Part shown: piece after piece, positions 11,961 to 42,105 of the stretch
Numbering within the stretch: the first letter of the stretch is position 1
Layout of the letters: each line of letters begins with the position of its first letter
Origin: Ramazzottius varieornatus
Lineage: Eukaryota; Animalia; Tardigrada
Assembly (NCBI GenBank): GCA_001949185.1
Contig: BDGG01000006.1
Coordinates: forward strand, 1,036,827-1,100,826
Length of the DNA stretch: 64,000 nt
Reading direction: 5' to 3'
The notes under the pieces: model-generated
What the model saw: only the letters and a program-made list of their open reading frames with translations
Told to the model about the DNA's origin: nothing
Database searches by the model: none
Made by a program: the position numbers and the translations under genes

Positions 11961-14606
11961 TTTCCGGAGGAACGCGATGTCTTCCTCGTTCAACAGAAAT
12001 GAAGGTACAGGCAGCATGTCCACTATGCTTTTCGGCAGCCAAGTTTCTAACACACGCTCCGGAACTGGGAGGGACTCCGTCTCAGCTGAAGTTGTCTCAG
12101 GAGAGCGAACAGGAGAAACTCGACCTAAGGTGTATTCGATCTGTTCTACTGTTTCGTCTATTCGTAACGGTGGAAGTTCCAATCTGCTAGAGTCAGATCT
12201 CTCTTGTGCCGTGTCGGCTTGCGTTAGATATGGTAGCACTGAGTCCGGTTGTTCAAGTGGAAAATTACCAGGGGCAGTGTTTGTGAGATCTGGTGGTGAG
12301 CGCGTGCTGACTATTGGAGAATTTTCTGAAGTGGTTTGATCAGATTTACTGTCTTGATTCATGTCTGACTTCTGGAGATCTGTGTTACAGCTGGCTAGTT
12401 GATCGAGGTATTCGCCAGGAGGTCGCCTGGAAAATTCGTCACATTGGACCTGAGGAGAGGAGCATAGAGCTGAGGCAGGAAAAACTCCGGTGGAACTACT
12501 CTGAGCTTTGACGTTTTGGCATTGTGCGTTTTCCGGAGTCACCGGACTCTTTTCAAAAGACTCGGAAAGAACCTTCAGTTGTTCGTGAAACTGTTGACGA
12601 AGTACGGGCAGGTGATCGGCGATGGCCTTGTCGTAACTTTCCTACGATAAAAAAACCAGTCAGAACCTTACGTCCACAGTCTGTGCGTGTGACGCACCGC
12701 GGAAACTGGACAGTTTTCGTACGATAAATACTGGACAATAAAGCGGGCCGAGCTTACCGAAATTAAGTCATTAGTCCTCCTCACGACAGGCCGTAAAGCT
12801 CCGTTGATTGTGTTGATCTTGAAAGTGGATTACAAAGTTTCGCTTTCAAGATAAGCAGCGCTCGAGTAGCTTATCTCGGAAGCGAAAACGAATTATTCTC
12901 TGCACACTTCTCAAAATTTCAAATTTCCATTTCTCAGCTGATCTCTGTCTGCACAGTGCTTCACGTTGCGAGATACCGTTTCACGTATGCGCTTCTTGAT
13001 ACCTATTAGTGTCGGAGATATCGGCAGACAGAGACTAGCCAGAGAGAAAACCATGAATTTCAGCCTAGTCAGGAGGCAAAGTTTGCCTACAAACCTACCC
13101 CGCAAAACTCGCGCATTCCCGCTCCCGTTTCCGATACTTTGGAAAAACGCAATTTCGCCTCACTCACGACTAATTTCCGTTGATCAAGCAAACTTAACTT
13201 TTAAATCCACCGTTTGCGACATAAACAGCTCGTCGTGAGGAGGACTAATGGTTCAGGTTGACTGCTGTTTTTCGGATATGACACACCCAGTCAGCCTTTT
13301 TGTCACCATGATTTTTACGCCTACATTCGTTTGTACCTTGGAGTGGCCTGTCGCTGCAAAGATGGCCTCTTCCACTGCCTCGATTTGGACCACTATGGAG
13401 TAGTAGATGGCCACAGACTTGAGGTTGGGTTCGTACAGTGGACCAAAGACCTGTCGCAGTCTACAAAAGACAACCAGGAACGGTTAGGCCACGTAAAACC
13501 CCGGGGAAGGTACGGCGAGAGTGGCTGAGTGACTTACAAATTATCTGAGAGCACTCTTCGTGCTTTGCCTGTCCGCATTGCAATGTTGAGGGGTATCTGG
13601 AACCTGTGAGGCTGTGGAGAAGGTCCAGTCTGAGCACTAGAAGGTGAGGTGCTGGTGGTGGAGGAATTCGATGATGAAGAGAGCTTTCTTCGGAGCATCT
13701 GCGTGAGCAGTGGCTGCGAGAATGCACCTGGCATTGCCGGGGATGACTGAGGAGGTAGTTGTGATCGAGAAGTGGTTGATAAGTTCAGAGGTGACTGTGC
13801 TGGAACGGCTTGTACGGAGGGAGGAACGCTGTTCACCGTGGCGAAAGCACCTGCAGCGACCAACGGTCAACACAGTCAGAGCCAATCAATCAATAACAAT
13901 GTAAATCAATCGAACTGGCAAGAGATGGACAGCTGAAACAGAAACCAGGTCTGCTTTGGTCAGCCAGTACGTGAATGGGCCCTGATTTCTATTATAAATG
14001 CCATTTCGACAAGATGACGTAACATGACCTGATTCGGACGTGATGCAGACCTGATGCGTCATGTAATGCTATGTCACACAAGCATACTAAAATTTTGATT
14101 TCAGAAAGCGGAAAATTCGGAGGATTTCTTCACGAGAGTTTCTTCTTACGAGCAACAATTTCATCTTGGTTAGGTCTTTGAAGGATATCTCTGATGGGCA
14201 GACAGACGGGGCATTCCGCAGCGACACAGCTTTTCCAGTGGCCAAAGATAGCTGTTGTCGTCGCGCAATTTGTCACTGTAAAACCAAACTCATGATATGG
14301 AGGACAATGGAGAAACAGATATCACAAAAATTTACCTGTGCAATTTCTTCCATTTCTACAGGTGTTCATATGGTAAAGCAACTGACGAATGCTCAGACAG
14401 TATGAATCAGTGCACAGCATTTCTGCTGGAGGGGCATCAGAGTGAAGGAGGCCAGAGTGATTAGCGTAGGGCAAACTACCTTCTCGGCAGCGTTCAGCGT
14501 AGACAAAGACCAGCAGGTGCCTCCGAATAGTCTCCCGACGTCTACGTGACTCTTCTACTGTTGGGTAAGAGCCGGAGCTCACCAGGGAGGGGATAACAGA
14601 CGACAT
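11910..14606 (-). CDS. Divergent CBP/p300-like protein (TAZ1 + KIX + Ser/Pro-rich region), ~521 aa; exons 14336-14606, 14150-14275, 13538-13850, 13337-13460, 11910-12641
   Basis: Spliced reading gives TAZ1-like RRETIRRHLLVFVYAERC...CTDSYCLSIRQLLYHMNTCRNGRNCT|VTNCATTTAIFGHWKSCVAAECPVCLPIR and KIX-like RRVLSDNL|LRQVFGP...IEAVEEAIFAATGHSK|ESYDKAIADHLPVLRQQF. All four introns are GT-AG with compatible phases (1,1,2,0). 1566 nt open. Confidence 0.75.
12772..13247. mobile_element. MITE, family A copy 2 (complete), inside the KIX intron of the CBP-like gene
   Basis: Perfect terminal inverted repeats tagtcctcctcacgac / gtcgtgaggaggacta. Second copy at 4640 and an isolated end at ~61060-61087. Confidence 0.85.
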
Positions 14607-16359: not shown

Positions 16360-19300
16360 CTACTGGAGCAGTTTGGCCCAAGCGGGATCCTTGTTGACCA
16401 AGCTCTCCTTCTGGTCGGAAGCTATCCTGTCGGGCTCGTTCAGCCACTTGCGGAAAGTACTGTGGTACTTCTCAACGTCGCTCTTCCCGAAGACCTCATC
16501 GAGTCTGTCCACGGGGAAGATCTCCGCCAGGATCAGTGGACCCATCATTTCCACCAAGTACTCCTTGTACTGCGGAACGTCCATCTCGATGTCTTCTGTC
16601 AGAGCGACGGCTTGTCCAAACCTAACACACAGAAACCATGAATTTTCGATATAACAACAGTCGACCGACAGAAAGACGTACCCGTTGACGAGAGTCTCCG
16701 GAGGTAGACTGCCTTCTTTGGCCAAACCCATGAGCAGCGCCACATGCTTCGGCCTGTCAGGCTTCTTGGCTTCGACATACAAATTCGCAGCTACCGTCAC
16801 GATAAACCGCTCTTTCTGGTCCGGACTTAGTCTGGCGAGTTGACTCGAGGCACCGCTAAGTTCCTCCTGTCAAACAGAAAAGATGTACCTTCGCAAAATG
16901 TCGCCATCCTCCATACTTTTTAGCTGAGAGGCCGGCAATGAACCTTCAAGTTTCATTATTTCAAGTGGCGCAGGCTTTCAGCTAACAACAACACAAAAGT
17001 GCGCCGCTTGAGAAAAGAATGTCGTCGAGTTTTTGTGCCGACTTCCCACTCGAACAAACCCGAACCAACGATACAAAACACCCCATTTGGTCCACATTTT
17101 ACCCAGAAGAAACCTCGTACCTGCATTTCGGCATCGTCAGCGTTGAGGAAGGAAGCCACCAGATGCTTGGTGAAGTCTTCCAGTTCCTCTTCCGGAACCG
17201 GTCCTTGTTCTTTCGGCTCCTCGTTCCTCTCATCCGTCGGTACATTCATGGGTGAGCCCATCCTGGGTGTAGGTGCCGGTGTAATTTGTGGTGAGCCTTG
17301 GTTGGAGGAAGATTCCGTCATCGGGCTGCCAACTCGCATGTCCGGTGTGTTCGTCAGCGAACCCCGATGCTCACCCCGTGACATGCTGTTCTCCCGACTG
17401 TTGGTTGCCGAACGATTCGGGTTGTCCATCCTGCAAAATCAAAAGCGTAAAATACGTGCAGAAATTTCTCTTCATAAAATTTCCCTAAGCTTCAACGATT
17501 CAGCCAGCGAAAAACGTATATGTAGCTGGACAGACGAGATGAGTCAAGTCGCGCACGATTTCAGTATCACTGGCTGAGAGCGTGCGGCGTGTAGAAAAAA
17601 CAACCTTGTTATTTTGTCAAGTGGCGCAAGTTCTCGTTGTTACTGGCTGAACGGGTGCGTCACTTGCGAAAACGATCTAAATCAATTCGTTGGCCAAGCT
17701 CCTGCGTGTTCTAAAAAAGGGACAGCTTCTCATACCGGTTGCCGAAAGGACCCAATGACGTTCTAGGCGGAGGATTCAGCGAGCCGCTACCACTCGTCCA
17801 CCTTTGAGGTCCCAAGGTGACTGGTCCCCCACTAGCGCCTCCTGATCCTTGACGATCCTACAGAAGTCCCACCACAGAAGTTAATGTTCGTTTCTGACTC
17901 ACTGAAAAGGCAGTACAGAATACTCACCGATTGTCCGACCATGGACAAGAATTTATTGGGCTTGCTGGCCACGCTGCTAGTCTTGACAGCCGACGCTGGC
18001 TGGCCCATCTGTCCGCCCTGTCGGCCATCTCTTCCAGCCATACCCGCACCTCCCTGCATGTTGTTCATGGCGTTCGGCACCGACCTCACGGATTTTATAC
18101 CACCAGCCAGATGTGGAGGTGGTTGACGGCTTCTGTCCGGTCCCATTGGTGGTCGTCCTTGTGGCATAGGCGGTGGCAGTTGGTGTATAGCCGTCATCGT
18201 TTCAGCTTTCGACTGTGCTTCCTCCTTCATCTTCTCTTGTCGCACTTCCTCCTTGGTCTTGAGGCCCTTGGAAGCGTTGAGTTTTCTTGGCACAAAGTTG
18301 TTATTCTTCAGGTCGATGGCGTCTTGCATCAGGAAACGGATGCGGGAAGACGTTACTTTCAGATCGATCATCTTTTGCAGCTGATCAAAAAAGAACTTCA
18401 CACTCTGCAACGAAAATGAACATCGTCCGTGTCCACATGCTTTCGTATAGATGCGTAATGAAAACCTTGTCTTTTTGGAAAGCAACAACGGCGAGTTTAA
18501 CCGTACAAAATGAAACCCAGGTTCGTTCAACCGGACGACACCAGGAGACAAGCTCGATTTCTATTCCGGCTAGCCAAACCTCACTTTTGCTTACCGTTAC
18601 GAATTCAGGTTTGACGATCTTCTGCGAACAAGTCATCAGGAGTTTACAGAGACATTCCATCTTCTCTTCATCGGCATCTTTAAAGTCGGGTCTTTTGGGA
18701 AGAAGCCTTTGGAAGCAGCTGAGAATGACACGGTCCGTCAACATGTCGAACTTGTACAACTCCGAAATGAACCTAAAAAGAAATCACAATGTTAGAACGA
18801 TGGTTTCTCTAAATTAAAACTCTGCGAAGCATCATCGAAGATCACAATCTCATTTTCACTAACGAAACAACTTTTCATCGAAGATCACGGCAAGTGGGAG
18901 GTCGGCAAGAAAATTGACAAGATTGTTTTCTCAAGTAACGCATTCCCTCAGCGCCACTAGCTGAAAGAGTGCGCCACTTCAGAAGTGCGGTCTCATCGTA
19001 TTCCCAAGTGGCGCACGCTTGCGGCGAACAACAGTTAACCCGTGCGCCACTTGGAAGAAGGATTCTGGGATTTTGCTTGCCCAGCTCTCATTCTTGAATA
19101 TCCATTTTTAAATCACAAACTTACGTAATATTTCCGACGTAGTGTCGTTTAGCCTTGACCCTCTTTTGTTCGGCAACTTCCGGGTCGACCGTCACGTCTT
19201 CCTTGTCCTTGTCAGACTCTTGTTCTTCTCTTTCCGTCTTCTCGAAGTAATGCTGCGCGCGTTGCAGCAAGACAGTTCGGAACTTCATAGCTTGAGCGGG

Positions 19301-22300
19301 GTTTCCCTTGTCGTCCACCTCCCCAGGTTCTAGCGGCACCTGTAGGTCGATCAGCTTACGGCACAATTTGGCGTAGATCTCGGCGTAGTTCTGTTCGTCC
19401 AAGGCTTTGTCGAAGATGACGTCGACAGCGCCAACCAAGAGTTCTCCCGACTTTGTGAAAGGCATGTCCAGCATCTTGTTAGACAGCTTCTCGTAGTTGT
19501 TCGGCGAGATCTTGTTCAGCAATGCTCGAACGCTCGAGAGAATCGACTGAAAACACAAGCGAATATTTCAAATAACATTAGAAAAATCATGCTTGGAAAG
19601 ATATTGTGGAATAATTCACTGTACCTCTTTCTCAGCTTCTTCAGAGTCGATCTGGACCTTGTCCTTCTTATAGCTCGGCTTCCAGGCGTTTTCACTGCTT
19701 GCAATGCTAGCGCTGAGGTCGCGATTCAGTGTGATGACGCGCTGCTGATGTTCTTCTTGTTGGAAGTTCCTGCTCGAGTTCACTCTGGGCATCTGCGGTC
19801 CACGTTGATCGTACCCACCACCGCCACCTCCTCTTCCTTGGCCTTGACCATGATACTGGTCATTCTACAAAACATAAACCCGTCAGCACCATCCAAACAT
19901 GGACCGAAATCTCGACAGACAAACTCGACAGGATCATTTCAAGTGGCGCACATTCCCACTGCTGTTGAATGAAAGAATGCATCACTTCAGAAACCGATCT
20001 TGTCAAAACTCCAAGTGGCGCACTTTCTCAAGGTCCACGCGGAAAACGAGCGCCACTTTGAACTCCACCAAGGAATTAACATTTCCAGCTCTTCAAATTT
20101 TTCTAAATTACATCTTATGCTTGAATTTCAAATTAGGTAATTTATTTTGCTCTCGATAAATCTGACTCTAGAATATTTCTTCTGCAGATACCCCCTTACC
20201 CTGTGGCCTCCCTGTCCGCCGCCCCCGCCATCCTTCTTGATGATGGCGTTGACTTTATTCTTCAAGTCATCGGAAGCCATCATATTGCCCTGCTTATATT
20301 TGTTCTCCAGGCTGAGCAGTGCCGAGCGGTCGTACGTCTGCCTGCCAGCCACCTTCTCGAGCTTCTCCATCTCGTGTTCCACCTCCACTTCCCCGTTGAC
20401 GTTCTCCACGGGCCGGTTCTCCGCCTGTCTGTTCTCCTGAACAGCTGGTGGCGGCGTGGCCACATGTGGAGGTCTAGCCAAGCGGGCATCCTGAACTTGT
20501 ACGGACTTCCGGCGGATCTCGGGCATGGCACCCAAGCCCATTCCACGGTCCACGTGAGGCTTGACGGGCTCTTCTGACTTGAGTTCAGGAGTGGCTGTGG
20601 CCGAAGGTCTTCGTGGCTCCAAGGATACCTTTGCGAAAACAAGAAAAAGCGCTAGAAGTATTTGCGACCTTCGTAAACAAACTCGTCAGGATCCCTTCTC
20701 AAGCGGCTCATGTTTACAGCCAGTAGCATTGAAAGCCTGCGCCACTTGGAAAAGTCGTCAACATCCGATTCTAAGTGGCGCACGCTTTCAACCACTAACA
20801 CTTGGAACGTGCGCAACTTTATAGGAAAACTATATCCACTGAATTTCTAGTTGTCTGACGGCCGAGCTTCACAGCACGGAAACGTAAACTACAGAAACCA
20901 AGGAGATACTCCGTACCTTGTCCATTACGGGTTGCGAGGCCTCTGACGGCATAGCGGGAGGCTTGGAAGACGTGTTGGAAGAGGAAGTGACTGTCGGCTG
21001 CGGAGGAGTGTCGCTAGCCTCAGTCTTGACGGAAGGCACATCGGAAACTGGCGGCTTGCTTTCAGGCGTTGTCCTAGCACGATCAGCTTTCGCTGCATCC
21101 TCTGCAACCACACAAAACGCAAAATCAGTCCTTCTGGAATATTTCAAACGAGAATCTCATCCTGCATACACGACGTCGCAGGCTTAGCATAACAGACGGG
21201 TATGCAGGTGGATGCAAAGTTTTCAAAGTTAGTCTCCGGTCTCACAGATGAGAAATAAACCATCATAAATCGAACTAAAATCGAACATAGAATGTATTCT
21301 TACCGTGTGGACGAGTTTCACCGGGCTGCTGTCGCATCTGGTCAGAAGAAGACTGTTGCTGCTGTTGTGAAGAAGTAACACCGGTATCATTCTTCACCAC
21401 AGTCGGACTATCTCCAATCTGACCTACAACACACATCAAAACCTTCCATTCTGCACCACGGAAGCACGCTGACATCATTAAGACAGCTGATGTCAAGATC
21501 GGCCCACCTTTAGACTCTGTATCCTTGGACTTGGGCGCGCCGCCGGAAGACTCGCTGGTTGTGCGGCTAGTGCTACCTCCCTCGTTCATCCGAGCATGGA
21601 TCTGTCGCGCAAAATCGCCCTGGATTGAGCGTTTGAGGTCGTCCTCCGTTGTAGGCTCCTTCTTGTCTTCTGCTGCTACAGATTCGCTCACAGAAGATTG
21701 ACGACTGGTTGGCTCGGAAGTCTGCAACTATAGACCCTATGTCAACCAGTTACCCCTTCTCATCTCATGCACCACCCTACTCTTATCCATTGAATACGTT
21801 CAGTGATGCTGTATGCAGGCGAACGAACTAATTTCCACGTGCATGACCCACGTGCATGACCCACGTGCATGACCCACGTGCATGACCCACGTGCATGACC
21901 CACGTGCATACAGCTCATAGTTTCACCACTCATCCGTGAGTATGCAGGTACGTGACGCACTATCACGCTTATCACCCGCCTGCACACTACTGGACTGTAA
22001 GTCAACCCCAGAACCAGTGTGCTGGTGCATGAAGTTCTTGACTGGCACATACCTGGCTGGCATCAGCTGGTACAGCAGCGGCTTTGGGTTTCTCATCGGT
22101 TTTCGGGATATCCACCACAGATCCACTCTTGGGATCAGTAAAGACCAGGACATTTTTTTTCCGTTCGGGCAATGGCTTCGTCGCGATCGGAACTGAAGGC
22201 GTACGACCTGGTGCCTGACCCGGCACGAAGAGCGGATCAGTCTGCCAGTAAGGGCGTACTGGAGGTCCGACACCAGGGGGTCTAGGCGCGAAGCTGGGTG

Positions 22301-23292
22301 TTCCAGGCGCTGCTCCAGTTGTCTGAGCTACCACGTCGGGGACCGAAAAACGAGGAGCAGCATTTATGCCAGGCTGACCAGCTCCACCTGTAGAGACACT
22401 CGGCGAGACGCTGCCCTGCGGCGAAGGGTAGCCTTGCGAAAGTGCGCCACTTGGACCGGGCACGAAAGCTACAAGAGAAAAATACATCGCTAATTTCCAT
22501 CCCCCTCACTTACAATCTAGTGAGTTCCGTTATAAGATTACGCTTCATGATAGCGGCGGTCATCTTTAAATATTGATTCTGACGTACCAACACATACTGC
22601 TATTCAGTTTTGACCAATTTGGAGACGATAATTTAGACGTCGTGCCTTTTTCTGCCGAAACAAACAGTCTGCGACTTACCAGGTTGATTCGGGTTGAACT
22701 GAGGAGCGACGAGTGCGCCAGCAGGCATGTAGAAGCCACCTTGTACGGGAGAAGTACCGTAGGACATCGGCATTGCCTGCCAAACCAAGAAGCGTTAGAA
22801 AAAGAAACGAGGTAACTGGTCAATAACCTGCATACATTCGCCCTCTCCAAGTACACACTGGGCAAGTATGCAGCTACGTGCTTTTCTGCAGTATTTACGG
22901 CCATCTACCTGTGGCATTCTCTGTGGCATCTGTTGGCCAGGTATCTGTTGAGGACTGTAGTATGGCATTCCGCCCATGGGCATGGTCATGACTACTCCTC
23001 CTGGGACGAAAGGGCTCTGTGGTGGGAAGGAATACATGCCCGGCATCATGGCCGGGTTGAATGCCTGACCATTCTGCATGAACTGCGGCGGTGGTGGTCC
23101 TTGGTGGTTGCTCATGCCTTGCTGGCCTGGAGGAAGGTATCCGCCAGCACCTCCTGGTGCACTATTCTGGTTGGGGTAGCTGCCCGACGTCGTTCGGGCT
23201 TTCTGAGGAGCAGAAGGCGGCCGATGCCGAATATTCTGCTGCTGTGACTGCTGCTGGCCACTGTTGAAATTAACCACGTTGGTAGTTTCCAT
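16360..23292 (-). CDS. EIF4G: Eukaryotic translation initiation factor 4 gamma, 15 coding exons, ~1346 aa
   Basis: Exons 22909-23292, 22680-22776, 22053-22468, 21508-21721, 21304-21423, 20917-21101, 20200-20628, 19625-19864, 19125-19546, 18595-18772, 17928-18404, 17736-17857, 17121-17430, 16682-16866 and 16360-16621 join in phase. Contains eIF4E motif YDRSALL, SENAWKP, MIF4G (VRALLNKISPNNYEKL...IFDKALDEQNYAEIYAKLC...FRTVLLQRAQ...SSRIRFLMQDAIDLK) and MA3 (EDIEMDVPQ). Confidence 0.93.
21836..21909 (+). repeat. 13-bp minisatellite (CACGTGCATGACC) x ~5.7 in eIF4G intron 3
   Basis: Perfect tandem units read directly; six CACGTG hexamers. Confidence 0.95.
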
Positions 23293-24931
23293 ATTCGTTG
23301 ATGTCTGATTCTGCAAAGCATAAAGAGACAAAGGTGAGTTTGAAGGGTGAGGTAACGATATGGACAGTCTTATCAGCTGACGGCGATAGAACGATGAATC
23401 AGCCAAGCCCTAGAAGACGAAATTTTACCCAAATGCGTCATTTCCGATTAGGTTCTCTAAAACTAATTTCCAAAAACCTCATTTCACTTTTTTCCTCTCA
23501 GGCTCGCCTTCGAAAAATTCATAAAAGTGATAAAACGCTCTCAAAACTACTCTCAGAGGATCGAGCCAAGGAGAAATTTTTGTTGATGAGCAGATGGTCG
23601 ATTGTCAAGTCGACAGAACATCTAATGCTACCTCGATTCTTCCATGATAACTACTACCTCTTCCATCTTACCGTGTTGGATAGCTCTTTCATACCAGTCT
23701 AGAACTAAAACATCGAAAAGAACAGGTTAATCTACGATCGTCATCCCCCAAAAAATCAACGGGACAACGGCGGTGGTAATTTCCTACGGATATTTTGAGG
23801 GTAAAAATCATCCATCATCATAATAGTCATTAGCGGAAATATTCGCAGTCAAAATCGCTCAAGATCTACCTTCAAGTCCTCGACGGATACATGGAGATGG
23901 CGGAGTCTGCTGGGAGCGACTCGACGCTAAAGGTACAATTTTGGAGAGTACAGAAAAATGAAGACAAGGAGGAGATCCCAAGAAGAAATCTGGAATAAGA
24001 TTGGGAATATTGAGGCTGAGACGATGGTCGAATACGAATGATCTACCGGCTCCCTCGCTTACCTAGATAACTCAAAGATATCCCCGAACGACGCGGAGCT
24101 TCTACTCCACTGCTCCTCCTAGTTCTGGAGGATGAATAGTGTCCAGATACCAAGTATACTTCGATCAAAACGGTGATGGGAAAGTTCGTTGATTTTAAAA
24201 TCTACGCAATGTCGGCTCGGTGATCACTGCTCGCGCCTGCTACGTCGCAATCACCAGCCCCAATCTGCGGTACCTACATCGTTCCAGGCGGTACGGTATA
24301 TCGCTGAGAGTAGGCCAGGTGTCAACTACCACCAGTTACCGGTCATCAGCCACCAGTACCGCTTTGGGTCGCTGCACGGTGGCAGTGCCAGTGGCACAGG
24401 CGGAGTTCTGTCTGACAATTTCACCAATCACATTTTGCTATATGCCCATGCCGACCAACATGTGGGACAATTCTAAATTGCGGTGATGACTCGACCGCAC
24501 AGATAAGTGCCTTCCCTGGGACTTGAGACGGAGGCGGAGTAACGTGGGCTCAATGGAAATCCTGCCAGACGGAGCGGCAGTCACGTGACGAAAGCGAGCT
24601 ACGAAAATGACGTTTGGTGAGAAACTCGGCGAGTCAGTCTGTTTGATTTATGGCGTAAGGTAAGTTTAGACGGATGCGAGCACTCTTGATCTGCTGGTGC
24701 TGGGCCAACATCAGCAACTTTCACACAGAGAGTGGCGGATGAAGAAGAGTATCTTACAGACAGATGGCACATCAACGACAAGTTAGCGAAAGAAACAAGA
24801 TACACATTCGATGAGAGAATGCGGAAACACGATAATATATCCACCGACACACTTTCGACTTCTCTCTCATTCCATCCTCATAGTCTCTACGTTCACTCAT
24901 AGAAAACAATCATACAAGAATCTCGATTAAT

Positions 24932-33778: not shown

Positions 33779-34690
33779 ATGGATGCAAATATTGGAATTA
33801 TTGACACTGTTCTCGCGAATGAGTCCGTGGCTGTGGAGGATGCAGCAGCAGAACGGTCACCAGCCAAGGGGAAGACGACAGGAAAAGGAATTACTTACGG
33901 TGAACTCGCTCTCCCCCAAGCTACCGTCGTAAAGATCGTCAAGGACTTCGTAAGTTACTTCGTTCAAATCTATGTGGAAGGTGGTGGGAATGTGTTTTCA
34001 TAATCAAATCCGATTTACAGTTACCCAGTCAGGCCGTACTGTCGAAGGAAGCGAAGGACATCTTTCGGAAAATATCTGCGTATTTTATTCTCTACGTGAC
34101 AGACTGGTGTGCAAAACGTCGCAGTCTTTACCCTGTTTCTTATGGCAACTTTCTGTCTGTAAAAAACGATTTTCTGATGTTTCAGTGCTTCGGACATCGC
34201 GTTGAGGAAGAAACGGAGAACAATCCTACCAGAAAATATCCTCGCAGCTTTGCAAGAGTTGGGTTTTGAGGATATGACGGTCAGGCTAAACCAGATTCTC
34301 TCGGGTGAGCTATGCCTGATTTTCAAAGTATCTTTAAATGTATATCTCATCGATGTTCGGATCTTCCACGGTATTTTAATTGTAGCGCGCAAGAGACAGC
34401 AGACGAAAGAAAAGTCGTCCCCGATACTCAAGGCACCAGCACCTCAGAACGATACCGAAGACGCAGCACTCGCAGCTGTCACCGACGATTTTGACGATCT
34501 AGACATACACTCTGAAGAAGAAGCTGCAGACGACATCGATCAGGCTTTCCCTGCTATCGAAGATTCAGTAGAGGTTGGTCAGGATGAATTCGTTGACCAA
34601 GATAACACAGAATCTTTTGAAGAAATGCATGACGAGCAGCGACGAGAAGTCGACATTACCGCGTTTACAGCCTCGGACGATGAGGAATGA
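33779..34690 (+). CDS. POLE3: Histone-fold protein of the NF-YB/Dr1/POLE3 family, best fit POLE3/CHRAC17; exons 33779-33949, 34021-34106, 34186-34304, 34386-34690
   Basis: ELALPQATVVKIVKDF|LPSQAVLSKEAKDIFRKISAYFILYVTDC|ASDIALRKKRRTILPENILAALQELGF plus an acidic tail. Intron phases compatible. Dr1/NC2-beta not excluded. Confidence 0.65.
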
Positions 34691-35475
34691 AAGATCTTTT
34701 CTTGTCTTCTTGATAGTTCAACCCGACGACGCGTCTGTGCCGCTGTCGGATGCATTGTTGGAGTCTTGGCTCTTGGTTCAGTTGAACAGAACTTTTATTT
34801 CAACATGCGCATGTCGTCACGAGGGACGTTACCTCAGTGTGGGCGAAAGTGCCACCTGTCGAGTGGTTCAAGCCTCACCCATGAAGCACTTTGACAAGGC
34901 CAAATTTGGCGAGCCTTGTCGTGTACAGTTTAGTCACTTGATCGATCAACTCCGGGTTGCGTATGGTTGGTACGGCTGGTCATGAAGCGCTGGATGATTT
35001 GTGGCCCACTCGGTAGTGTGACGTGTGTCGGCTGATGTCAGAGTCAGACTTAGACCAGCTGGGCTGCTTTGTGTGCGGTGTTGTGCTTTCCTTATTCCAG
35101 TTCACTTGCCTTTATGCTGCCTTTATGCCATCTTGTACGTGCGACTTCTTCGAAGACTTTCAAAGTTCTTTTGCGCAACAACAACAACATCGTTAAAGAT
35201 TCCGAAAGTGATAGTTGCCTCAGGACTTGTTGCAGTCGTCAAAGGCAGGTACAGGAACGTGTGGATTCAAAGAAAACCTTGTCGAGGTCAGCTGTTTGCT
35301 CGTTATCAAGTCTTCTCAAAGTCACCAAGATGCCCTTCATGCTGCAAAGCTGTGGACACGCTATGCGATTTGCTGCACCGGTATGATATTTCAGCTACCT
35401 TGCAACTTTTGAATGTCTATCCTTATCACGACGATGGCTTTCTAGGACGGAATTTGTCGCCGTTGCTCCTCGGAC

Positions 35476-38377
35476 ATGGAAGGAATTAGCAGTAACGGTA
35501 AGTGTATCGAATTTTACTTTGATTTGTTTGGTGAACATGGTGCAATGCAAGGGTGTCAGCATGGGTTTCAAACTAAAGTGATCAGGGCTCGAACTGGACA
35601 CGGCTTGTGGATATGCAACGTGGTGGTGCGATTAGTTTCCCTGTTTGCTGATCTGGATACACCTGCGTACAGGGAGAGTAGGCGTTGCGTCGGATTAGGA
35701 AAACTTGTCTGAGTTTTTGTCGATAGGGATCGATTTATTGACTTTCATTTCAGTCAGCTGTCTTCTTTGTGGCTGTGTTTTATGTTTACTCTTTTTCCTG
35801 TAGAGAGTTCCGGCAGCGAGATGCGAGTCAACGCGGAGAACGAAGTGCCGGATCAGATTGAAAAGCACGAAGACGAACTTATGAACGGTGCTCCCACCAG
35901 TAGCAACAAGAAGTCCTTCGGGGATCGAGTCAGCAAACTGTTGGGCCCCGTGGTATATTCCGAAGGCCCGGAGATAACGGTACATTTTTTTTGCATGAGA
36001 GAAGTAGTCATACCATGAAGGTGATGGTTATCACCTGGTTGTCTGACTGCGTTACAGGAAAGCTTCGTTCATGTGGCTCGCAGCATGTCAACATTCACCG
36101 CGGCTGAGCGCGCCGATTTTATCTTCCATCTCGTGATTATGTACTGCGAAGCACGTCGCGAAGACCAGCCCAAGATTCAAGGACTACTGAGTGAACTGGC
36201 CAAGAAAAATGTCTTGGCCAAAACGCACATTCTGCAAAGGTAAAACTTGCATTGAATCCACTCAGAAAACCTACTCAGCCTGTTTTCCCAAAGTGGCGCC
36301 GATCTCAGTCAATAACAGTGACAACATGCGCCACTTCGAAACCCGGCAAGATCGTCTTTTCAAGTGGCGCACAATTTCCGGCAGTAAAAATGGACACGTG
36401 CGCCATTTGAGATATCGATCTAGTGAATTCATTTTCCAACGTCCCGTATTTCGATTCTGCACAGTTTCATTCAGTTTCATCTTCGCAGCGCGAAACGTCT
36501 GGCGGCGGAAGTCGATGGGTTGTTGATCGACTGGCCCAACGTTTATTCGTGTACCATCGAGCTCCTTGGAGCTTTGTTGGTCCGAAGCGACGAGAAAGAC
36601 ACCGTAGAGAACCTGACAGCGTTCCGAAGAGCCTTCAAGGAGAACCGTGGTTTTCTCCAATGTCTCTACTCGACCTACCCCAACTTGGGCCTCGAGACTT
36701 CCCAGTCCACCCCAAAGAAACGCGGCTCGATGGGAGCGAGAACGTCCTTCAGCGAGCGACGAGCCTCGATGGGCAACCAGACCCTTCCCTTCTTCCGGTC
36801 GCCCGTCGAAGTGAAGGATAGGTTTGTCCAGCCTGTCGGACTGCGTCCTGCATCGACTGGCAAGCCTCCTGCCCATGTCTACACGAGGGAGGAGATGCTA
36901 AAGTTGGGGGAAGCCGTAAAAAAGATACCTGTTCGAGCTGAGGTGTTAGAAGCCGTCAGAGCTTTCAAGAACGATAGCTGGGTGGGCGATCGTGATAACC
37001 AACAGCTCAAGCGTTCACGCTTTGTCTCGGAGTCGACGGCTCATAACGAGGGATTCAACCCGACGAAGAGGATGTTAGAAAGTACGAGCCCGACATTCGG
37101 AGCAGAGAATGGCGGCAGCTCGCGAACCTTACAACCTCATCCCGAAAAGGTAAGGCTCTCAGTTCACTGCACAGTCAACAACGTCCGGCTTGCACCTGCA
37201 TACAAGCCACCCCTAGTTTCACGGCAGGTGCTCGCATGCAGGTGCACCAACCTCTCCTTGTTTCACGGGTCGCATACACCTGCATGGTTCTCCGCTGTAC
37301 TTCTGTGCTGGTAACGTGTATGCAGGTGCCTGTAAGTCGACCAGGCTTTGTTGTTGACGTTGCATTTTCCTTCGGACGTTTCTGGAAACCGTTTCATGGA
37401 TCGGTAAGAAATCTCGCTTAATTTTTTTGCAGGGTCACAACAACCGAAATCAGTTTTTCGGAGGAACGCGTCAGCGTTACGTCTCGGAGAGTCATCACCA
37501 ACAACCACCCAGCCACGCTCCTTCGACCAGCAAGTCTCCCACTCCAGCTGCTGGTGCCGCGCCACGTAACGTTCCTGAAGTCTCTCCTCGAGGGAAGCCA
37601 GTTAGTCCACCGTCGCACAGAGGGGCTCCGGGCAGCAAGCCTCGTTATAACAGCGTCAGCACGTCTTCGCCAGTCAAGATGGAGCCAGCCGGCCAAGCCA
37701 AGAATCAGCCCAACGACCCACCCCAGGCAACACCTGCACCGCATGTCACGCCACATGGACCAGCTAGTCGTCCCCAACACTCCAACGGTCGTCCTGCGAA
37801 TGCTAAACCGAACAAGTTCTTGACTGCTCTTCACGTAAGTGATCTACGCGCTCGGCGGGTAATCTCGGCAGGATCGTTTTTCCAGGTGCCGCATGCCTCC
37901 AGCCAATAATACCGAACTCGTGCGCCACTTGAAGAAACTGATCGTTTCTCCAAGTGCCGCACGCTTTCAGTGAATTGAAGCGTGCGCCACTTGGGAAAAC
38001 GTTCTTGTCGTGTTTGTTTGCCGAGCTCCCGTCTCTCTGAGATAGAGTGGTGACTTTAGTGGACGGTGTGTGAAGGTAAGAATAATCTTTTGCAGGTGGA
38101 AAGAGCAATGGAAACGGAGAGCGGACAGCCAAGTCCGACGTTGAGTCCAGGTGTGAAGGGTTCTTGGACCCAAGGAAGTGGCATGCCACACAAGGGTGGC
38201 GAAGGTCTGCCGCACTTCCCGCCACCGCCATCTGCTCGTCCCTTCGGGAATCAAGGAGCCAACCGTCATACGGGACCGGTCCATCATGGTCAGTTCCGTA
38301 CTGGCTATTCAGGGGCGCCGCGGCAGGCACAGCCTGGATCGTCGGAGGAGAACTGGCGCCGCCCTGTTCAGCCATGA
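35476..38377 (+). CDS. Rearranged eIF4G paralogue, ~574 aa: MA3, eIF4E-binding motif, post-MIF4G linker, no MIF4G; exons 35476-35497, 35804-35979, 36058-36239, 36489-37149, 37433-37834, 38096-38377
   Basis: Six exons join in phase (1725 nt, GT-AG, no stops). MA3-like ERADFIFHLVIMYCEARREDQPKIQGLLSELAKK...VDGLLIDWPNVY, then YTREEML, KPNKFL and SWTQGSG...PPPPSARPFGN. Each segment aligns to the local eIF4G. Confidence 0.8.
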
Positions 38378-39279
38378 GCAGGCACAGCCCTGATCATGGT
38401 CATAACTCAGGATGCTGTCAAAACTGTTTCGCGCAAGCTTCTGTCTTTTTTTTGTACATAGATCGGACCCATTTCTAACTTGTTGTTCACTTGCCGCGCT
38501 CTTTAGAACGTTGATAAGTTTCTCATCATGTCTTCGGCACAAAAACACATCATGGCTCGCTTCGGTTGAGGAGTTGAATTTATCCCAGTTGAAAGCTTTT
38601 ACCTTAGGTTCTGTGTCTATCTTTTATTATTCTTGCTAATCCTCGCAGAATTCCAGGCTGAGCTACATTCGAGCTTCTTTCGTGGTTGTTAATCTTCTTA
38701 CTAAGCATTGAGTTTTTCTTCTGCTTGTGTACAGTATTTTCATGAATTTCACCTCCCTTGTGGAGAAGTTCTTCCTCCTAAACATACAACCGAATAAAGA
38801 GAGTACATCACGTCTTCTCTTTACAACTACTGAGCTAGGCAGCTTAAATTCGCCTCTCGAATACCTCGACTTTTGGGATGGAGGAGTGAGACCGGAAGAC
38901 AGTTTTCAAAAGTCGGATATAAAAGTTAAGTAATTGTCAGATCTTGTAGGCGCCACCTACAGGCAGGCTGCAGCTTTTTACACGTAGTCCCAGCCACGTC
39001 ACGGAAGTGGCATGTTCCGCCGTTGGGTGTTTGCCGGATGAACACGGCACGGTGTCACAAGAAAAATTCCGAAAAATTCCTTTTTGTTTCTTACTTTCTT
39101 CCAAAAATCATTTTCGCTCGGGACGTTCATCGGGATTTGCGGACGCTCTGCTGTTTAACGTTGGCTATAGTTGTACCGGATATCACCTACGGATTGTGCG
39201 GGCTGTCGCTGAAAGGAAAGCTACGTGGCTTGGGAGGTGTCTGCTCGAACAGCGATTTGTGCTCCATTTACATTTGAAA

Positions 39280-42105
39280 ATGGTACGAAATGATCGTTTA
39301 CGGTTGTGCCTAAATTCTAAGTCGCCCGAAGATTTGGACGGCTCCAATGACCATGTATCTTAATTTGCAGGTGCTCCTGGCCGCTGCAGTATGCAACAAA
39401 CAGGGCAAAGGTACGTCTGAGAAAGGGAATCTTACTCGAACTAATGGTGGCGCAGTATTGGTCGGAATTTGCCTGGAACTGTGCGCGAGTTGACCAGGGT
39501 TATTATTCAGTGGATTTATCTTTGTAGCCTTGATATCCCGGCAGTTTGTGGAGATGACACGATCCCGCATCGAAGGGCTCCTCGCCTCATTCTCTAAGCT
39601 AATGACTACTGGAAAGCAGCATACGTTCGTGGAGACGGAGACGGTGCGCTTCGTGTACCAGCCCATCGATAAGATCTACATGGTGCTGATCACCACGCGG
39701 AACAGCAACATCCTTGAAGATCTGGAGACTTTGCGACTCTTCGCGCGCGTGGTAATTATCCTTCCTGTTCTTTTCTAGTGTTCAAGCTCTTTGACAGATT
39801 TGTGTGGAATTTTCAGGTGCCGGAATACTGCAAATTGTTGGATGAAACCGACGTCTTAAAAAATGCTTTCTCGTTGATCTTCGCTTTTGACGAGATTGTG
39901 GCGCTTGGATATCGTGAAAGTGTCAGTCTAGCGCAAATTCGAACCTTTACGGAGATGGATTCACAAGATGAGCGTATCCAGATCGCTCTGCGACAGGTAA
40001 GTTCTAGTGCTATCGAATTTGTCAGCAAGTATAGTACGACCTGATAGAAACTAATGCTTATTCATGGACGATGTCACGTGTCAGTAGCCTGGTTTCTGTT
40101 TGAGTCTACTTCCGGTTCGCTATTATCAGTGCACGATGTCGTTTGGTTTTGCAGACGCAAGAACGCGAAGCAAAGGAAGCTTCGAAGCGAAAAGCTAAGG
40201 AACTGACGCAAATGCGTAAGGACATCGCCAAGCTCGGGCGAGGTATGCCGAGTGGAATGGGCGGCATGGGCTCTTCCGCCAGCTCGTTCAATACACCCAT
40301 TGTGGAGAGTGTTCGAAACGAGGAAAAACCCACATCATCCTATCAAGCACCGTAAGCCAAATATTGATTCCCCTAAAAGGGTGATGTGTGGTTTCTCACA
40401 AAAAGTATTCCGGTTGTAGGAAAGCGTCAACAGGTAAAGCTATGAAACTTGGAGTGAAGACGAAAGATGTGGATCATTTTGTGGACCAGTTGAAGTCTGA
40501 AGGGGAAAGTAAGTTTAGAAAGTTTAGAGAAGTCTGTTTGCGTTTTTCTCTACGGTGTTCCGCTTTACAGAGGTGATGTCCTCGGCTGCTGCTTCGACCG
40601 CTCGAACGCCAGCTACGGTGGCCGAAGCGGCCAGCCAAGCTGCAGGACGAGAAAGGTGCGAGTTGGTTCTTTCAACTTTCCTATTCCTCCGAAATTTCGT
40701 TTCAGAAATTGGTAGTTAATTCTTTAGCGTTCACGTTGAGTCGAAAGAAGAGATTACAATGTTGATGAAGCGTGATGGTGGCTTGGTCGGAGATTTGGAA
40801 ATTACCGGCACGCTAGCCTTCCGTACGACTGACGAGAACCTGACCAAGTTGCAGCTTACTTTGGGTTCCGGTGAAAAACAGTGCAACATTCAGGTACGAA
40901 CGTATGAGGATTTTCGTTTGGACTTGGGAGGTTGGCAAATCAACGTACGGGATCGTCGTTTTATGTGGCGCACGTTTCCAGTCAGCAACTGTGAAAGCCT
41001 GCGCCCCTTATGATGACCGTTTCATGTGGCGCACTTTACCGAGCAACAACAATGAAGAGGCGCGCCTCTTGAGATAACGATCTCGAGTGGCGCACGCTTC
41101 TGGCCGAAAACAATGAGAACCTGCGCCACTTGGAATAACGATCTTGTACGGTTCATTTGCCGGTCTCCCAGTCTTAGTTACGGAAATGGCCCATGCAGAT
41201 GTTAGGTTGTGTTTCTTGCAGCTCTTCCCGAAGTTTGACAAGGCCAAATGGCTGAACGAAGGCGTCGCCACGCTGAAGGATCCCAATGAGGCCTTCCCAC
41301 TGAACATCGCCATTCCGCTTCTCCGATGGCGTATGTCTTCTTCCGACGAATCTGACATACCTCTAGCCATCAACTGCTGGCCTTCTGAAGCCGGTAAAGG
41401 ATGCACCGTCAATGTCGAGTACGTCCTGAACGACACTGCGCTGGAGTTGAACGATGTCGTCATTTCCATTCCGATACCGTAGGTTAATTTTATTCCTTCT
41501 ATGTGCTCACCTGGCTGAATATGTTCTTTTGGTATAGACAAGGGACTGGAACTCCGATTGTGGGTGATCTGGACAACGGACAGTACTCCTTCGAACGCGG
41601 GTCGTTAATGTGGAAGATTCCCGTCATTGATGACACAGCTGCAGTTGGAACCATGGAGTTCACTACACCGGGTGGAAACCCTAACTCGTTCTTCCCCATC
41701 AGAGTGAACTTTACGTGTGGAGTCAGCTTGGTCGGCGTTGAAGTATGTTCACACTTTGTACAAAAGACGATATTCGGAATGTAAATTACCAAGGCAAATG
41801 GAGGCTGGACAAACAAACTGGGCCAGACTGATTTTCCTAAGTGGCGCACGTTTATAGTGTTATTTGATGCAAGCGTGCGTCACTTGGAAAAGGGGTCTTG
41901 TCAAGTTGACAAGTGACGCAGTTTCCCAGTATTAGTGGCTGAAGCCATGCGTCACTAGGAAAAACGGTCGCGTCGAGTTTGCCTTCTCGGGTCCAAAATG
42001 ATCTGATTTTTGTAGGTTGAGGAAATTCATACGATTAAAGACGAAGAAGCAGTCAAGTTTTCCACGGAACACACTTTAGCCATCAAGAAGTACGAGATCA
42101 TTTAG
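39280..42105 (+). CDS. ARCN1: Coatomer subunit delta (delta-COP), ~11 exons
   Basis: M|[13 protein letters not shown]|[69 protein letters not shown], mu-homology [11 protein letters not shown] and FFPIRVNF, ending KYEII*. Confidence 0.95.

What the first reader, a model, noticed from the sequence alone, without database searches (positions are those of the whole stretch)
35476..38377. Circularly permuted, MIF4G-less eIF4G paralogue: a candidate combined eIF4E/eIF4A decoy
Seen: six exons splice into an intact ~574-aa ORF whose parts match the eIF4G at 16360-23292 in a different order. First is MA3: DFIFHLVIMYCEARREDQPKIQGLLSELAKK...VDGLLIDWP vs RFIVTVAANLYVEAKKPDRPKHVALLMGLAKE...TEDIEMDVP. It sits on a 182-nt phase 0/2 exon, matching the parent's 185-nt phase 0/2 exon. 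Next is HVYTREEMLKL vs QTYDRSALLSL. Last is KPNKFL followed by a phase-0 intron and PTLSP...WTQGSG...PPPPSARPFGN, vs KPNKFL, phase-0 intron, VTLGP..WTSGSG...PPPRTSLGPFGN. No MIF4G lies between. Known: YxxxxL-phi binds eIF4E, MA3 binds eIF4A (as in PDCD4), and MIF4G is the core needed for initiation. Inference: the gene arose from the junction of a tandem eIF4G duplication and later lost MIF4G. It could act like 4E-BP and PDCD4 in one chain. High divergence with an open frame suggests selection. I know of no described protein with this architecture, but I could not search.
Basis: partly seen in the sequence, partly recalled or inferred. Interest (0 to 1): 0.92.

Follow-up and report, generated by a model that had tools for sequence, protein, structure and literature searches.

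The report
Tardigrade eIF4G-derived eIF4E-binding protein
This is an expressed tardigrade-only gene (Ramazzottius varieornatus RvY_11382) that was built from rearranged pieces of translation factor eIF4G, lacks that factor's core domain, and probably binds the cap-binding protein eIF4E, so it is a candidate new regulator of protein synthesis.

Summary
All five splice junctions are present in spliced transcript contigs from four studies. A sixth intron lies upstream, at 35381-35445. The conserved start codon is ATG 35330, giving 601 aa rather than 574; the GenBank model of 673 aa starts at 35114.

The gene is RvY_11382. It was deposited in 2015 as 'tardigrade-unique protein with predicted mitochondria targeting peptide 1'. 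Orthologues were found only in tardigrades (Hypsibius, Paramacrobiotus, a congener).

- **Fold:** the only folded domain, residues 140-295, has an MA3 fold. The top five of 48,161 PDB chains are PDCD4, eIF4GI and DAP5 MA3 domains (Z 11.8-13.9). Pfam does not detect it.
- **Origin:** a family profile picks three exons of the neighbouring eIF4G as its best non-self hits in the window, in permuted order. Three intron positions are shared.
- **MIF4G:** absent.
- **eIF4E binding:** the Y-x-R-x-x-[M/L]-L motif and a downstream hydrophobic motif are conserved. They dock on the R. varieornatus eIF4E dorsal and lateral surfaces in silico (ipSAE 0.87, best control 0.01).
- **eIF4A binding:** doubtful, because one of the two PDCD4 acidic-patch residues is lost family-wide.

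The eIF4G descent and probable eIF4E binding are supported. The 'double decoy' function is untested. This scan had not noted the gene on other DNA.

The parts
35099..35380 (+). 5' exon. It holds weak upstream ATGs at 35114 and 35125 and the conserved start ATG at 35330 (MPFML..CGH..).
   Evidence: Transcript contigs start at 35099, 35151 and 35210 and join 35380 to 35446. The frame and ATGs were counted.
35351..35466 (+). Conserved N-terminal C-x-H-x10-C-x2-C motif (P0010 C80, H82, C93, C96), split by the 65-nt intron 35381-35445. It may be a one-zinc knuckle.
   Evidence: This stretch is 18 of 27 identical to both Hypsibius and Paramacrobiotus. Zinc binding is inferred.
35446..35497 (+). Exon 2 of the transcript.
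35804..35979 (+). Exon 3 of the transcript. Its 3' part encodes the first MA3 helix. It ends in phase 0 at the same point as the eIF4G exon 17121-17430.
36058..36239 (+). 182-nt exon with phases 0 and 2, encoding the core MA3 helices. It is the counterpart of eIF4G exon 16682-16866 (185 nt, same phases).
   Evidence: Smith-Waterman score 55 against 20.9 +/- 3.9 for shuffles, 0 of 2000 reaching it. tblastn E 0.003.
35902..36696 (+). MA3-fold domain (P0010 residues 140-295, eight helices), spread over three exons. The D-W-P signature is at residues 240-242.
   Evidence: AlphaFold2 pLDDT 70-87. VIA-align top five are all MA3 domains, Z 11.8-13.9. ESM Atlas gives 0.91 by features and TM 0.74 by structure.
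36489..37149 (+). 661-nt exon. It encodes the C-terminal half of MA3, a disordered spacer, the eIF4E-binding motifs and the RxRxxS and S/T-P motifs.
36880..36900 (+). Canonical eIF4E-binding motif Y357-T-R-E-E-M-L363. The family consensus is Y-[ST]-R-x-x-[ML]-L.
   Evidence: Y357, R359 and L363 are invariant in the family. A helix is predicted at 359-370. In the model these residues contact the eIF4E dorsal surface. The region aligns to the eIF4G motif at 20314-20334.
36925..36975 (+). Non-canonical, lateral-surface motif region (residues 372-388, [LP]P..[LV][LV] type).
   Evidence: Conservation, predicted helix 376-386, and interface residues 372-388.
37009..37035 (+). Invariant K-R-x-R-[FY]-V-S-E-S motif (RxRxxS, the AGC-kinase type of site). 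A second copy lies at 37469-37492.
   Evidence: Invariant columns K400, R401, R403, V405-S408. DNA repeat D5. The kinase reading is inference.
37066..37092 (+). Invariant K-R-x-L-E-S-T-S-P motif, which includes a proline-directed Ser site.
   Evidence: its function is inferred
37433..37834 (+). Exon encoding low-complexity disordered sequence. It ends with KPNKFL (37805-37822) plus four residues and a phase-0 intron.
38096..38807 (+). Last exon. It carries the linker motif TLSP..SWTQGSG (38138-38182), the conserved C-terminal ENWRR, the stop at 38375-38377, the 3' UTR, AATAAA and the poly(A) site near 38807.
16360..23292 (-). Neighbouring eIF4G gene, the source of the parts. eIF4E motif at 20314-20334; MIF4G exons at about 18388-19558; KPNKFL at 17946-17963; linker exon at 17736-17857; MA3 exons at 17121-17430, 16682-16866 and 16360-16621.
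   Evidence: Pfam MIF4G E 8e-11 and weak MA3. Match to human eIF4G1 E 3e-9. Sequence. Motif coordinates.

Best explanation
The locus is RvY_11382 of the tardigrade Ramazzottius varieornatus, a seven-exon, polyadenylated, tardigrade-restricted gene.

Its product is most likely 601 aa, starting at ATG 35330. It has:
- a short conserved Cys/His motif at the N-terminus;
- one MA3-fold HEAT domain;
- a long disordered tail.

The tail carries a bipartite eIF4E-binding site (canonical Y-x-R-x-x-[M/L]-L helix plus a downstream hydrophobic motif), two RxRxxS motifs, an S/T-P motif, and the KPNKFL...W-x-x-GSG motif of the eIF4G inter-domain linker.

The gene descends from eIF4G by a rearrangement that put the MA3 exons in front of the eIF4E-binding and linker parts. 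The junction of a local duplication would do this. The MIF4G core was lost. This happened before Hypsibioidea and Macrobiotoidea split.

Inferred mechanism:
- Without MIF4G it cannot build a normal eIF4F.
- It therefore acts as a 4E-BP-like competitor or holder of capped mRNPs, probably under kinase control.
- The MA3 domain supplies a second, still unknown contact. eIF4A is possible but not favoured.

Shown: transcript structure, conservation, MA3 fold, similarity to eIF4G and shared introns. In silico only: eIF4E docking. Inferred: competition, repression and regulation.
For: Transcript: spliced contigs from four studies cover every exon and reach a poly(A) tail.

Identity and range:
- P0010 (GAV00551.1 / BAQ94588.1) is encoded exactly by the window.
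- An exhaustive HMMER search of 1.84 billion representatives found five clusters at E <= 0.001. The one with a source name is Hypsibius exemplaris. The word-index search with P0009 added R. varieornatus and Paramacrobiotus metropolitanus. Three hits come from unnamed sources.
- The gene is single copy in the genome.

MA3 fold.

eIF4G descent:
- Profile hits to three eIF4G exons rank 1, 2 and 4 among non-self segments.
- The four other MA3 loci the genome search found are not hit; two of them lie in tandem in one PDCD4-like gene.
- The exon-pair score lies 8.7 SD above shuffles.
- Three intron positions and phases are shared.

eIF4E binding:
- The motif residues are invariant.
- ESMFold2 complex with R. 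varieornatus eIF4E RvY_03327 (P0019): ipSAE 0.87 in three runs, best of three controls 0.01. The runs agree in at least 84% of contacts, and partner pLDDT is at least 65.
- That mark was reached by 51 of 78 solved complexes and 2 of 108 mismatched pairs.
- The interface covers the H30-P31 and W66-helix region, residues 132-143, and lateral residues 40, 55-58 of eIF4E.

Selection: conservation is mosaic.
Against: - Pfam finds no MA3, no eIF4E-binding family and no other family, even at E <= 10. A family profile finds nothing in PDB sequences.
- The individual profile hits to eIF4G are weak (E 0.01 to 1.2 in a database of only 2080 segments).
- The complex test is untested for peptides and disordered chains. 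Many eIF4E-peptide complexes are solved, so the pass may reflect memory; it shows likeness, not binding.
- The motif has Met where the consensus has Leu in Ramazzottius and Hypsibius.
- The gene lies head-to-head with eIF4G, 12 kb away with other genes between them, so it is not in tandem today.
- There are no expression data across conditions and no experiment on function.
Confidence: 0.6

Rival explanations
1. It is a positive, specialised scaffold, a 'mini-eIF4G'. It would link cap-bound eIF4E to the 43S complex through the retained linker motif (the eIF3-binding region in mammals) and to eIF4A through MA3. In this way it would support translation of particular mRNAs, for example during entry to or exit from anhydrobiosis.
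For: It keeps three eIF4G elements, not just the eIF4E motif. The linker motif is 54-57% identical across tardigrade superfamilies. In mammals the MIF4G-MA3 linker binds eIF3 (review read). The source paper picked its six candidate genes from 'abundantly expressed genes'; that this gene was among the six is inferred from its GenBank name.
Against: MIF4G is the conserved core that binds and activates eIF4A, and it is absent. Homology of the tardigrade linker motif to the mammalian eIF3-contact segment could not be shown with tools. The acidic patch is half lost.
Confidence: 0.15
2. It is a 4E-T or Cup-like mRNP storage factor. It would bind eIF4E on capped mRNAs and hold them silent and protected in granules, or shuttle eIF4E to the nucleus, rather than simply titrate free eIF4E.
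For: The canonical motif (Y-T-R-E-E-M-L) resembles the 4E-T type as I recall it. The tail is long and disordered, with basic K-R-x-R patches that could act as nuclear localisation signals. The binding is bipartite, as in Cup, Thor and 4E-T.
Against: No 4E-T, Cup or other family is detected. There are no localisation data. The resemblance to 4E-T is from memory and was not tested.
Confidence: 0.12
3. The eIF4G resemblance outside the MA3 exon is chance in low-complexity sequence. On this reading the protein is a tardigrade MA3/HEAT-domain protein with an unrelated role that does not bind eIF4E.
For: The hits to the eIF4E-motif exon and the linker exon are weak (E 0.01 and 0.05). Y-x4-L-hydrophobic motifs are common in disordered sequence. 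Searches of PDB sequences with the motif regions found nothing.
Against: Three independent eIF4G exons rank at the top of 2080 segments, each on the expected profile region. The motifs are invariant where the surrounding sequence is not. Intron positions are shared. The complex prediction passes with controls at 0.01.
Confidence: 0.1
4. It is a mitochondrial protein, as its GenBank name suggests.
For: The 673-aa model has an N-terminal extension that the depositors' programs scored as a targeting peptide (name; method).
Against: The 72-residue extension is absent from every orthologue. Its ATG has T at position -3, whereas the conserved ATG 35330 has A at -3. Two of four transcript contigs start downstream of that ATG. 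The paper states that only MAHS and ATPM1 of six candidates localised to mitochondria.
Confidence: 0.03

Closest known systems
eIF4G (the neighbouring R. varieornatus gene at window 16360-23292; human eIF4G1)
   Same: Both have an MA3-fold domain with the D-x-P signature, a bipartite eIF4E-binding region and the KPNKFL...W-x-x-GSG linker motif. Three intron positions and phases are shared.
   Different: The order is circularly permuted, with MA3 first. There is no MIF4G, no long N-terminal region like that of the neighbouring eIF4G, and no W2. A new N-terminal Cys/His motif is present. The protein is 601 aa rather than well over 1000.
4E-BPs with bipartite motifs (4E-BP1/Thor, Cup, 4E-T; Igreja et al. 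2014, PMC4164784)
   Same: A canonical helix is followed by a non-canonical motif about 12-15 residues downstream. [quoted passage not shown] Conserved Ser/Thr sites lie nearby.
   Different: There is no sequence-family relationship. This protein carries a folded MA3 domain and eIF4G linker elements, and it is eIF4G-derived rather than an independent invention.
PDCD4
   Same: Both are MIF4G-less proteins with the MA3 fold. PDCD4 gives the best structural matches (Z 12.6-13.9). RxRxxS sites recall the S6K/AKT control of PDCD4 (my recollection).
   Different: This protein has one MA3 domain, not two. The E249-equivalent acidic residue is lost. R. varieornatus has a separate PDCD4-like gene with two MA3 domains (contig C3) that the family profile does not hit.
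DAP5 / eIF4G2 / p97
   Same: It is an eIF4G paralogue with an MA3 domain (Z 11.8) that does not bind eIF4A, which shows that the fold alone is not predictive.
   Different: DAP5 keeps MIF4G and W2 and lacks an eIF4E-binding motif, the reverse of this protein.

Membership tests
eIF4G family | MIF4G (HEAT-1) core domain | tested here: not met
   There is no PF02854 hit on the exons or on the full-length orthologues at E <= 10. The only folded domain is residues 140-295.
eIF4G family | eIF4E-binding motif Y-x4-L-hydrophobic | tested here: met
   Y357, R359 and L363 are invariant, and position 362 is M or L. The region aligns to the eIF4G motif region. Docking passes its controls (in silico only).
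eIF4G family | Common descent with a bona fide eIF4G | tested here: met
   Profile hits to three eIF4G exons, exon-pair z score of 8.7, and shared intron positions and phases.
eIF4G family | eIF3-binding inter-domain linker | tested here: inconclusive
   The tardigrade eIF4G linker motif is kept. Its equivalence to the mammalian eIF3-binding segment could not be shown.
MA3 domain (PF02847) | Match to the Pfam model above its cut-off | tested here: not met
   No hit at E <= 10. The genome-wide PF02847 scan does not list this locus.
MA3 domain (PF02847) | MA3 fold | tested here: met
   VIA-align against 48,161 chains: ranks 1-5 are PDCD4, eIF4GI and p97 MA3 domains, Z 13.9-11.8, 126-154 residues aligned, rmsd 2.9-4.0; the next hit has Z 10.4. 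Foldseek TM 0.66-0.70 to PDCD4 MA3. ESM Atlas TM 0.74 and feature score 0.91.
MA3 domain (PF02847) | eIF4A-binding acidic patch (PDCD4 E249/D253, at positions -4 and 0 of the D-x-P signature) | tested here: not met
   The mapping was verified on the PDCD4 chain sequence and the mutants. D240 (position 0) is invariant. Position -4 is G, T, A or Q in all family members, whereas the neighbouring eIF4G has D there.
4E-BP class (functional class) | Canonical plus non-canonical eIF4E-binding motifs | tested here: met
   Conserved motifs, predicted helices at 359-370 and 376-386, and dorsal plus lateral contacts.
4E-BP class (functional class) | Physical binding to eIF4E and displacement of eIF4G; repression of cap-dependent translation | not testable with these tools
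   Only a structure prediction is available.
PDCD4 | Two tandem MA3 domains | tested here: not met
   There is one folded domain only. The genome's two-MA3, PDCD4-like gene is elsewhere, on contig C3.
Mitochondrial presequence proteins (the GenBank name) | Conserved N-terminal targeting peptide on the real N-terminus | tested here: not met
   The extension is absent in orthologues, its ATG context is weak, and the paper reports only two other candidates as mitochondrial.

The most novel reading that the evidence does not exclude
Tardigrades evolved a kinase-switched shut-off factor for cap-dependent translation from a permuted eIF4G. One abundant protein would clamp eIF4E through dorsal and lateral motifs. 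Through its MA3 domain and retained linker it would also hold eIF4A or eIF3 away from productive eIF4F. That would allow the rapid, reversible translational arrest and mRNP preservation needed for anhydrobiosis. It could act together with the tardigrade-only MIF4G-bearing eIF4G-like gene array noted 250 kb away.
Probability: 0.15. Interest if true: 0.85.

Novelty: new variant of a known kind. Interest (0 to 1): 0.62.

Why it matters
- **A mechanistic lead for a tardigrade-only gene.** Tardigrade-unique genes are mostly discussed as disordered protectants. This one is a tardigrade-only gene from a study that chose abundantly expressed candidates. It can now be read as a rearranged translation-initiation factor with a specific, testable partner, eIF4E RvY_03327, and mutants can be designed at once (Y357, L363, the 372-388 motif, D240, S406).
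- **Gene birth by circular permutation.** It is a clean natural case at exon boundaries, in a factor where domain order has been stable across eukaryotes.
- **Corrected annotation.** The start codon and the 'mitochondria targeting peptide' name both look wrong.
- **Possible link to anhydrobiosis.** If the protein represses translation, it connects the initiation machinery to reversible metabolic arrest.

Tried and rejected
- **Pfam:** the five exons singly gave nothing. The full-length orthologues gave nothing at E <= 10.
- **PDB sequences:** the family profile found nothing. phmmer with the eIF4G linker exon, the eIF4G eIF4E-motif exon and this gene's motif region found no eIF4G, 4E-BP or 4E-T peptide. 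This is uninformative for short motifs, because even the genuine eIF4G motif finds nothing.
- **Foldseek:** on the 673-residue model it gave no hit at E <= 0.001 because of the disordered bulk, although the PDCD4 MA3 domains had the best TM scores.
- **ESM Atlas:** nothing usable on the tail, residues 320-673.
- **Synteny:** Synteny in Hypsibius and a dN/dS estimate with the congener's cDNA could therefore not be done.
- **Finding eIF4E:** the first attempt, with one exon frame, returned only a 93-aa fragment. An alignment of exon frames then retrieved RvY_03327.
- **Literature:** searches for RvY_11382, BV898_07213 and tardigrade plus eIF4E-binding found no paper.
- **MA3 tree:** a tree with eIF4G, DAP5 and PDCD4 was not built. 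At 10-14% identity it would not be reliable, and eIF4G orthologues could not be fetched under the length rule.
- **Rejected readings:** fusion with the upstream gene, because a stop at 35051-35053 closes the frame and run X7 has separate contigs; and pseudogene status, because the orthologues are intact and the gene is expressed.
Full report
**What is there**

The region 35099-38807 (+) is one gene. I laid Logan contigs from four runs, belonging to four studies, on 34000-39900. The runs had been found because they hold about the exonic share of the stretch's words.

Each run has a single contig that carries every exon. There is one more joint at 35380|35446. One contig ends in a poly(A) run at 38807, 20 nt after an AATAAA. 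In one run the upstream gene forms a separate contig ending at 34859. In another run the two are merged, but the reading frame is closed by a stop just before 35054.

**Start codon**

In-frame ATGs lie at 35114, 35330, 35339 and 35363.

- The GenBank model (P0010, 673 aa) uses 35114. Exon by exon it is exactly what the window encodes.
- The Hypsibius and Paramacrobiotus proteins begin MPFML..CGH.., which corresponds to 35330. Nothing upstream of that is conserved.
- ATG 35114 has T at -3 and ATG 35330 has A at -3. Two of the four contigs start downstream of 35114.
- I therefore take 35330-38377 (601 aa) as the likely CDS.

**Rule on joined sequences**

My own joined exon model was not sent to any search, fold or complex tool, and that step is left out. 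Searches used single exons by reference, or database proteins that the tools returned (P0010, P0009, P0004 and others). In one search a script concatenated the exons only to count the frame and list ATGs. Only 15- and 60-base stretches of the join (the start-codon context and the 3' end) were printed, and nothing joined was sent to a search.

**Identity and range**

An exhaustive HMMER search with the 220-aa exon against 1.84 billion representatives found five clusters and nothing else at E <= 0.001. Look-ups name them as follows:

| Protein | Source | Length |
|---|---|---|
| P0010 (RvY_11382, GAV00551.1 / BAQ94588.1) | Ramazzottius varieornatus | 673 aa |
| P0004 (BV898_07213) | Hypsibius exemplaris | 643 aa |
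| P0012 / P0011 (LOC129582546) | Paramacrobiotus metropolitanus | 532 / 496 aa |
| P0009 | unnamed, 73-75% identical (a congener) | 602 aa |
| P0003, P0005 | unnamed fragments | 242 / 235 aa |

P0010 was deposited as 'tardigrade-unique protein with predicted mitochondria targeting peptide 1'. The family is single copy in this genome.

The source paper is Tanaka et al. 2015 (PMC4326354). It chose six abundantly expressed, tardigrade-unique genes with predicted mitochondrial peptides and reports that only MAHS and ATPM1 went to mitochondria. That this gene was one of the other four is my inference from its name. No paper mentions either locus tag.

**The folded domain**

AlphaFold2 on the seven-sequence alignment gives one confident domain, residues 140-295 of P0010 (window 35902-36696). 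It has eight helices at pLDDT 70-87. Everything else is below 50 except two short helices at 359-370 and 376-386.

- An exhaustive structural comparison with 48,161 PDB representatives puts five MA3 domains on top: PDCD4 3eij_A Z 13.9, 2rg8_A 13.4, 2ion_A 12.6, human eIF4GI 1ug3_B residues 1234-1416 Z 12.0, and p97/DAP5 3l6a_A 11.8. The next hit is CNOT1 at 10.4.
- Foldseek agrees on TM score, 0.66-0.70 to PDCD4 MA3.
- The ESM Atlas agrees by both routes: feature score 0.91 with 23 of 30 hits MA3, and TM 0.74 to a chordate MA3+W2 cluster.
- Pfam does not detect the domain. It only barely detects the MA3 of the neighbouring eIF4G (E 0.058).

**Relation to the neighbouring eIF4G**

The gene at 16360-23292 (-) is a genuine eIF4G. 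Its exons hit MIF4G at E 8e-11 and human eIF4G1 at E 3e-9.

I built a profile from the orthologue family and searched all 2080 open segments of the window. After the gene's own exons, the ranking was:

1. the eIF4G exon with its eIF4E-binding motif (E 0.0098, about 70 profile positions, including the region after the motif);
2. the eIF4G linker exon (E 0.053);
3. an unrelated proline-rich segment (E 0.22);
4. the eIF4G MA3 exon (E 1.2).

Each eIF4G exon aligned to the expected part of the profile. The genome's other MA3 loci were not hit at all. These are a PDCD4-like gene with two MA3 domains on C3 and single MA3 loci on C4 and C5.

The 182-nt and 185-nt exon pair scores 55 against 20.9 +/- 3.9 for shuffles, with 0 of 2000 reaching it. 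The following exon pair is marginal (86 of 2000), and the preceding pair is not significant.

Read directly from the sequence, both genes have:

- a phase-0 intron just before the 182/185-nt exon;
- a phase-2 intron 14 residues before the D-x-P signature;
- a phase-0 intron 4 or 6 residues after KPNKFL.

The order of parts is MA3, eIF4E motif, linker here, and eIF4E motif, MIF4G, linker, MA3 in eIF4G. The break of the permutation coincides with the eIF4G intron between the linker exon (17736-17857) and the first MA3 exon (17121-17430). This is what a gene spanning the junction of two tandem copies would look like.

The present arrangement is head-to-head, 12 kb apart, so at least an inversion must be added. 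The area is clearly rearrangement-prone: a 1.47-kb inverted copy of the eIF4G 5' end, 97% identical, sits at 1915-3376. The mechanism of origin is therefore plausible but not proven.

**eIF4E binding**

- In the family alignment Y357, R359 and L363 are invariant. Position 362 is M or L. A second hydrophobic motif follows after about 12 residues. This is the bipartite design described for 4E-BPs.
- Result: ipSAE 0.87 in all three runs, best of three controls 0.01. The runs agree in at least 84% of contacts, and partner pLDDT is at least 65. That mark was reached by 51 of 78 solved complexes and 2 of 108 mismatched pairs.
- Contacts run from Y357-L363 and following residues to the H30-P31 and W66-helix region and residues 132-143 of eIF4E (the dorsal surface). 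Residues 372-388 contact eIF4E residues 40 and 55-58 (the lateral side).
- Caveats stated by the tool: it is untested on peptides and disordered chains, and a pass can come from memory of solved eIF4E-peptide complexes. I read the result as strong likeness to known eIF4E ligands, not as proof of binding.

**eIF4A binding**

- PDCD4 binds eIF4A through an acidic patch. The E249A/D253A double mutant abolishes binding in vivo.
- On the PDCD4 chain sequence these two residues are positions -4 and 0 of the D-x-P signature, and D414/D418 are the same positions in the second domain.
- The neighbouring eIF4G has D at both positions.
- The new family keeps D at position 0 (D240, invariant) but has G, T, A or Q at -4 in every member.
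- The DAP5 MA3 domain shares the fold and does not bind eIF4A.
- I put eIF4A binding at roughly 0.3.

**Other conserved elements**

- An N-terminal C-x-H-x10-C-x2-C motif is 67% identical across superfamilies.
- K-R-x-R-[FY]-V-S-E-S is invariant. A second copy is visible as a DNA repeat. It fits the RxRxxS pattern of AGC kinases.
- K-R-x-L-E-S-T-S-P is invariant.
- The C-terminal ENWRR is conserved.
- The linker motif lies in the part of eIF4G that binds eIF3 in mammals, but I could not demonstrate equivalence.
- Conservation is mosaic. The MA3 domain is 48-53% identical and the linker motif 54-57% identical to Hypsibius and Paramacrobiotus. The spacers are about 25% identical. That argues for purifying selection on the domain and motifs.

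**Verdict**

The eIF4G descent in permuted order and the absence of MIF4G are well supported. eIF4E binding is probable (about 0.75). A repressive, 4E-BP-like role is the best mechanistic reading (about 0.5). The combined eIF4E/eIF4A decoy is possible but not favoured.

The gene was already known as an uncharacterised 'tardigrade-unique' entry. Its reading as a rearranged eIF4G with an eIF4E-binding site appears to be new. Other notes of this scan report a tardigrade-only MIF4G gene array and a divergent eIF4E in the same genome. My own scan found at least five eIF4E loci. The initiation toolkit of this animal therefore seems unusually diversified.

Noticed in passing
window 1915-3376 (+) vs 21950-23422 (-): A 1.47-kb inverted duplicate, 97.4% identical, of the 5' end (promoter and first coding exons) of the eIF4G gene. 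It looks like a recent partial copy (tblastn hits).
   Followed up: partly
window 4640-5113 vs 12773-13249: A direct repeat of about 475 bp, 93.5% identical. The second copy lies inside the stretch another note calls a CBP/p300 derivative.
   Followed up: no
window 36306-36424 and 37861-38015 (introns of this gene); also eIF4G introns near 16990-17010 and 17560-17700: Copies of a short palindromic repeat built around AAGTGGCGCAC / GTGCGCCACTT. One low-depth contig in run X1 even joins 36380 to 37976 through it. The repeat resembles the 36/72-bp phased arrays noted by the scan near this window.
   Followed up: partly
window 35114-35329: The 72-residue N-terminal extension of the GenBank model, which gave the gene its 'mitochondria targeting peptide' name, is not conserved and is probably 5' UTR with weak upstream ATGs.
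   Followed up: yes
G000 contigs C1:9217280-9217967, C3:3292303-3292960, C4:2158923-2159418, C5:2312695-2313479, C7:841816-842217 (loci L001-L008): There are at least five eIF4E-family loci in R. varieornatus. The loci on C4 and C7 are divergent and carry long extra regions. The locus on C1 (RvY_03327) looks canonical.
   Followed up: partly
window 37011-37032 and 37468-37489: An internal DNA repeat encodes the two copies of the R-x-R-[FY]-V-S-E-S motif. This suggests a small internal duplication of a regulatory site.
   Followed up: no
runs X3, X4, X5, X8 (study P2): Runs labelled as four different organisms (B to E) hold the stretch's words at about the exonic share (0.61-0.66). In X4, the one that was laid, all six contigs were at least 99% alike to the window. 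The labels may cover the same species or very close strains.
   Followed up: no
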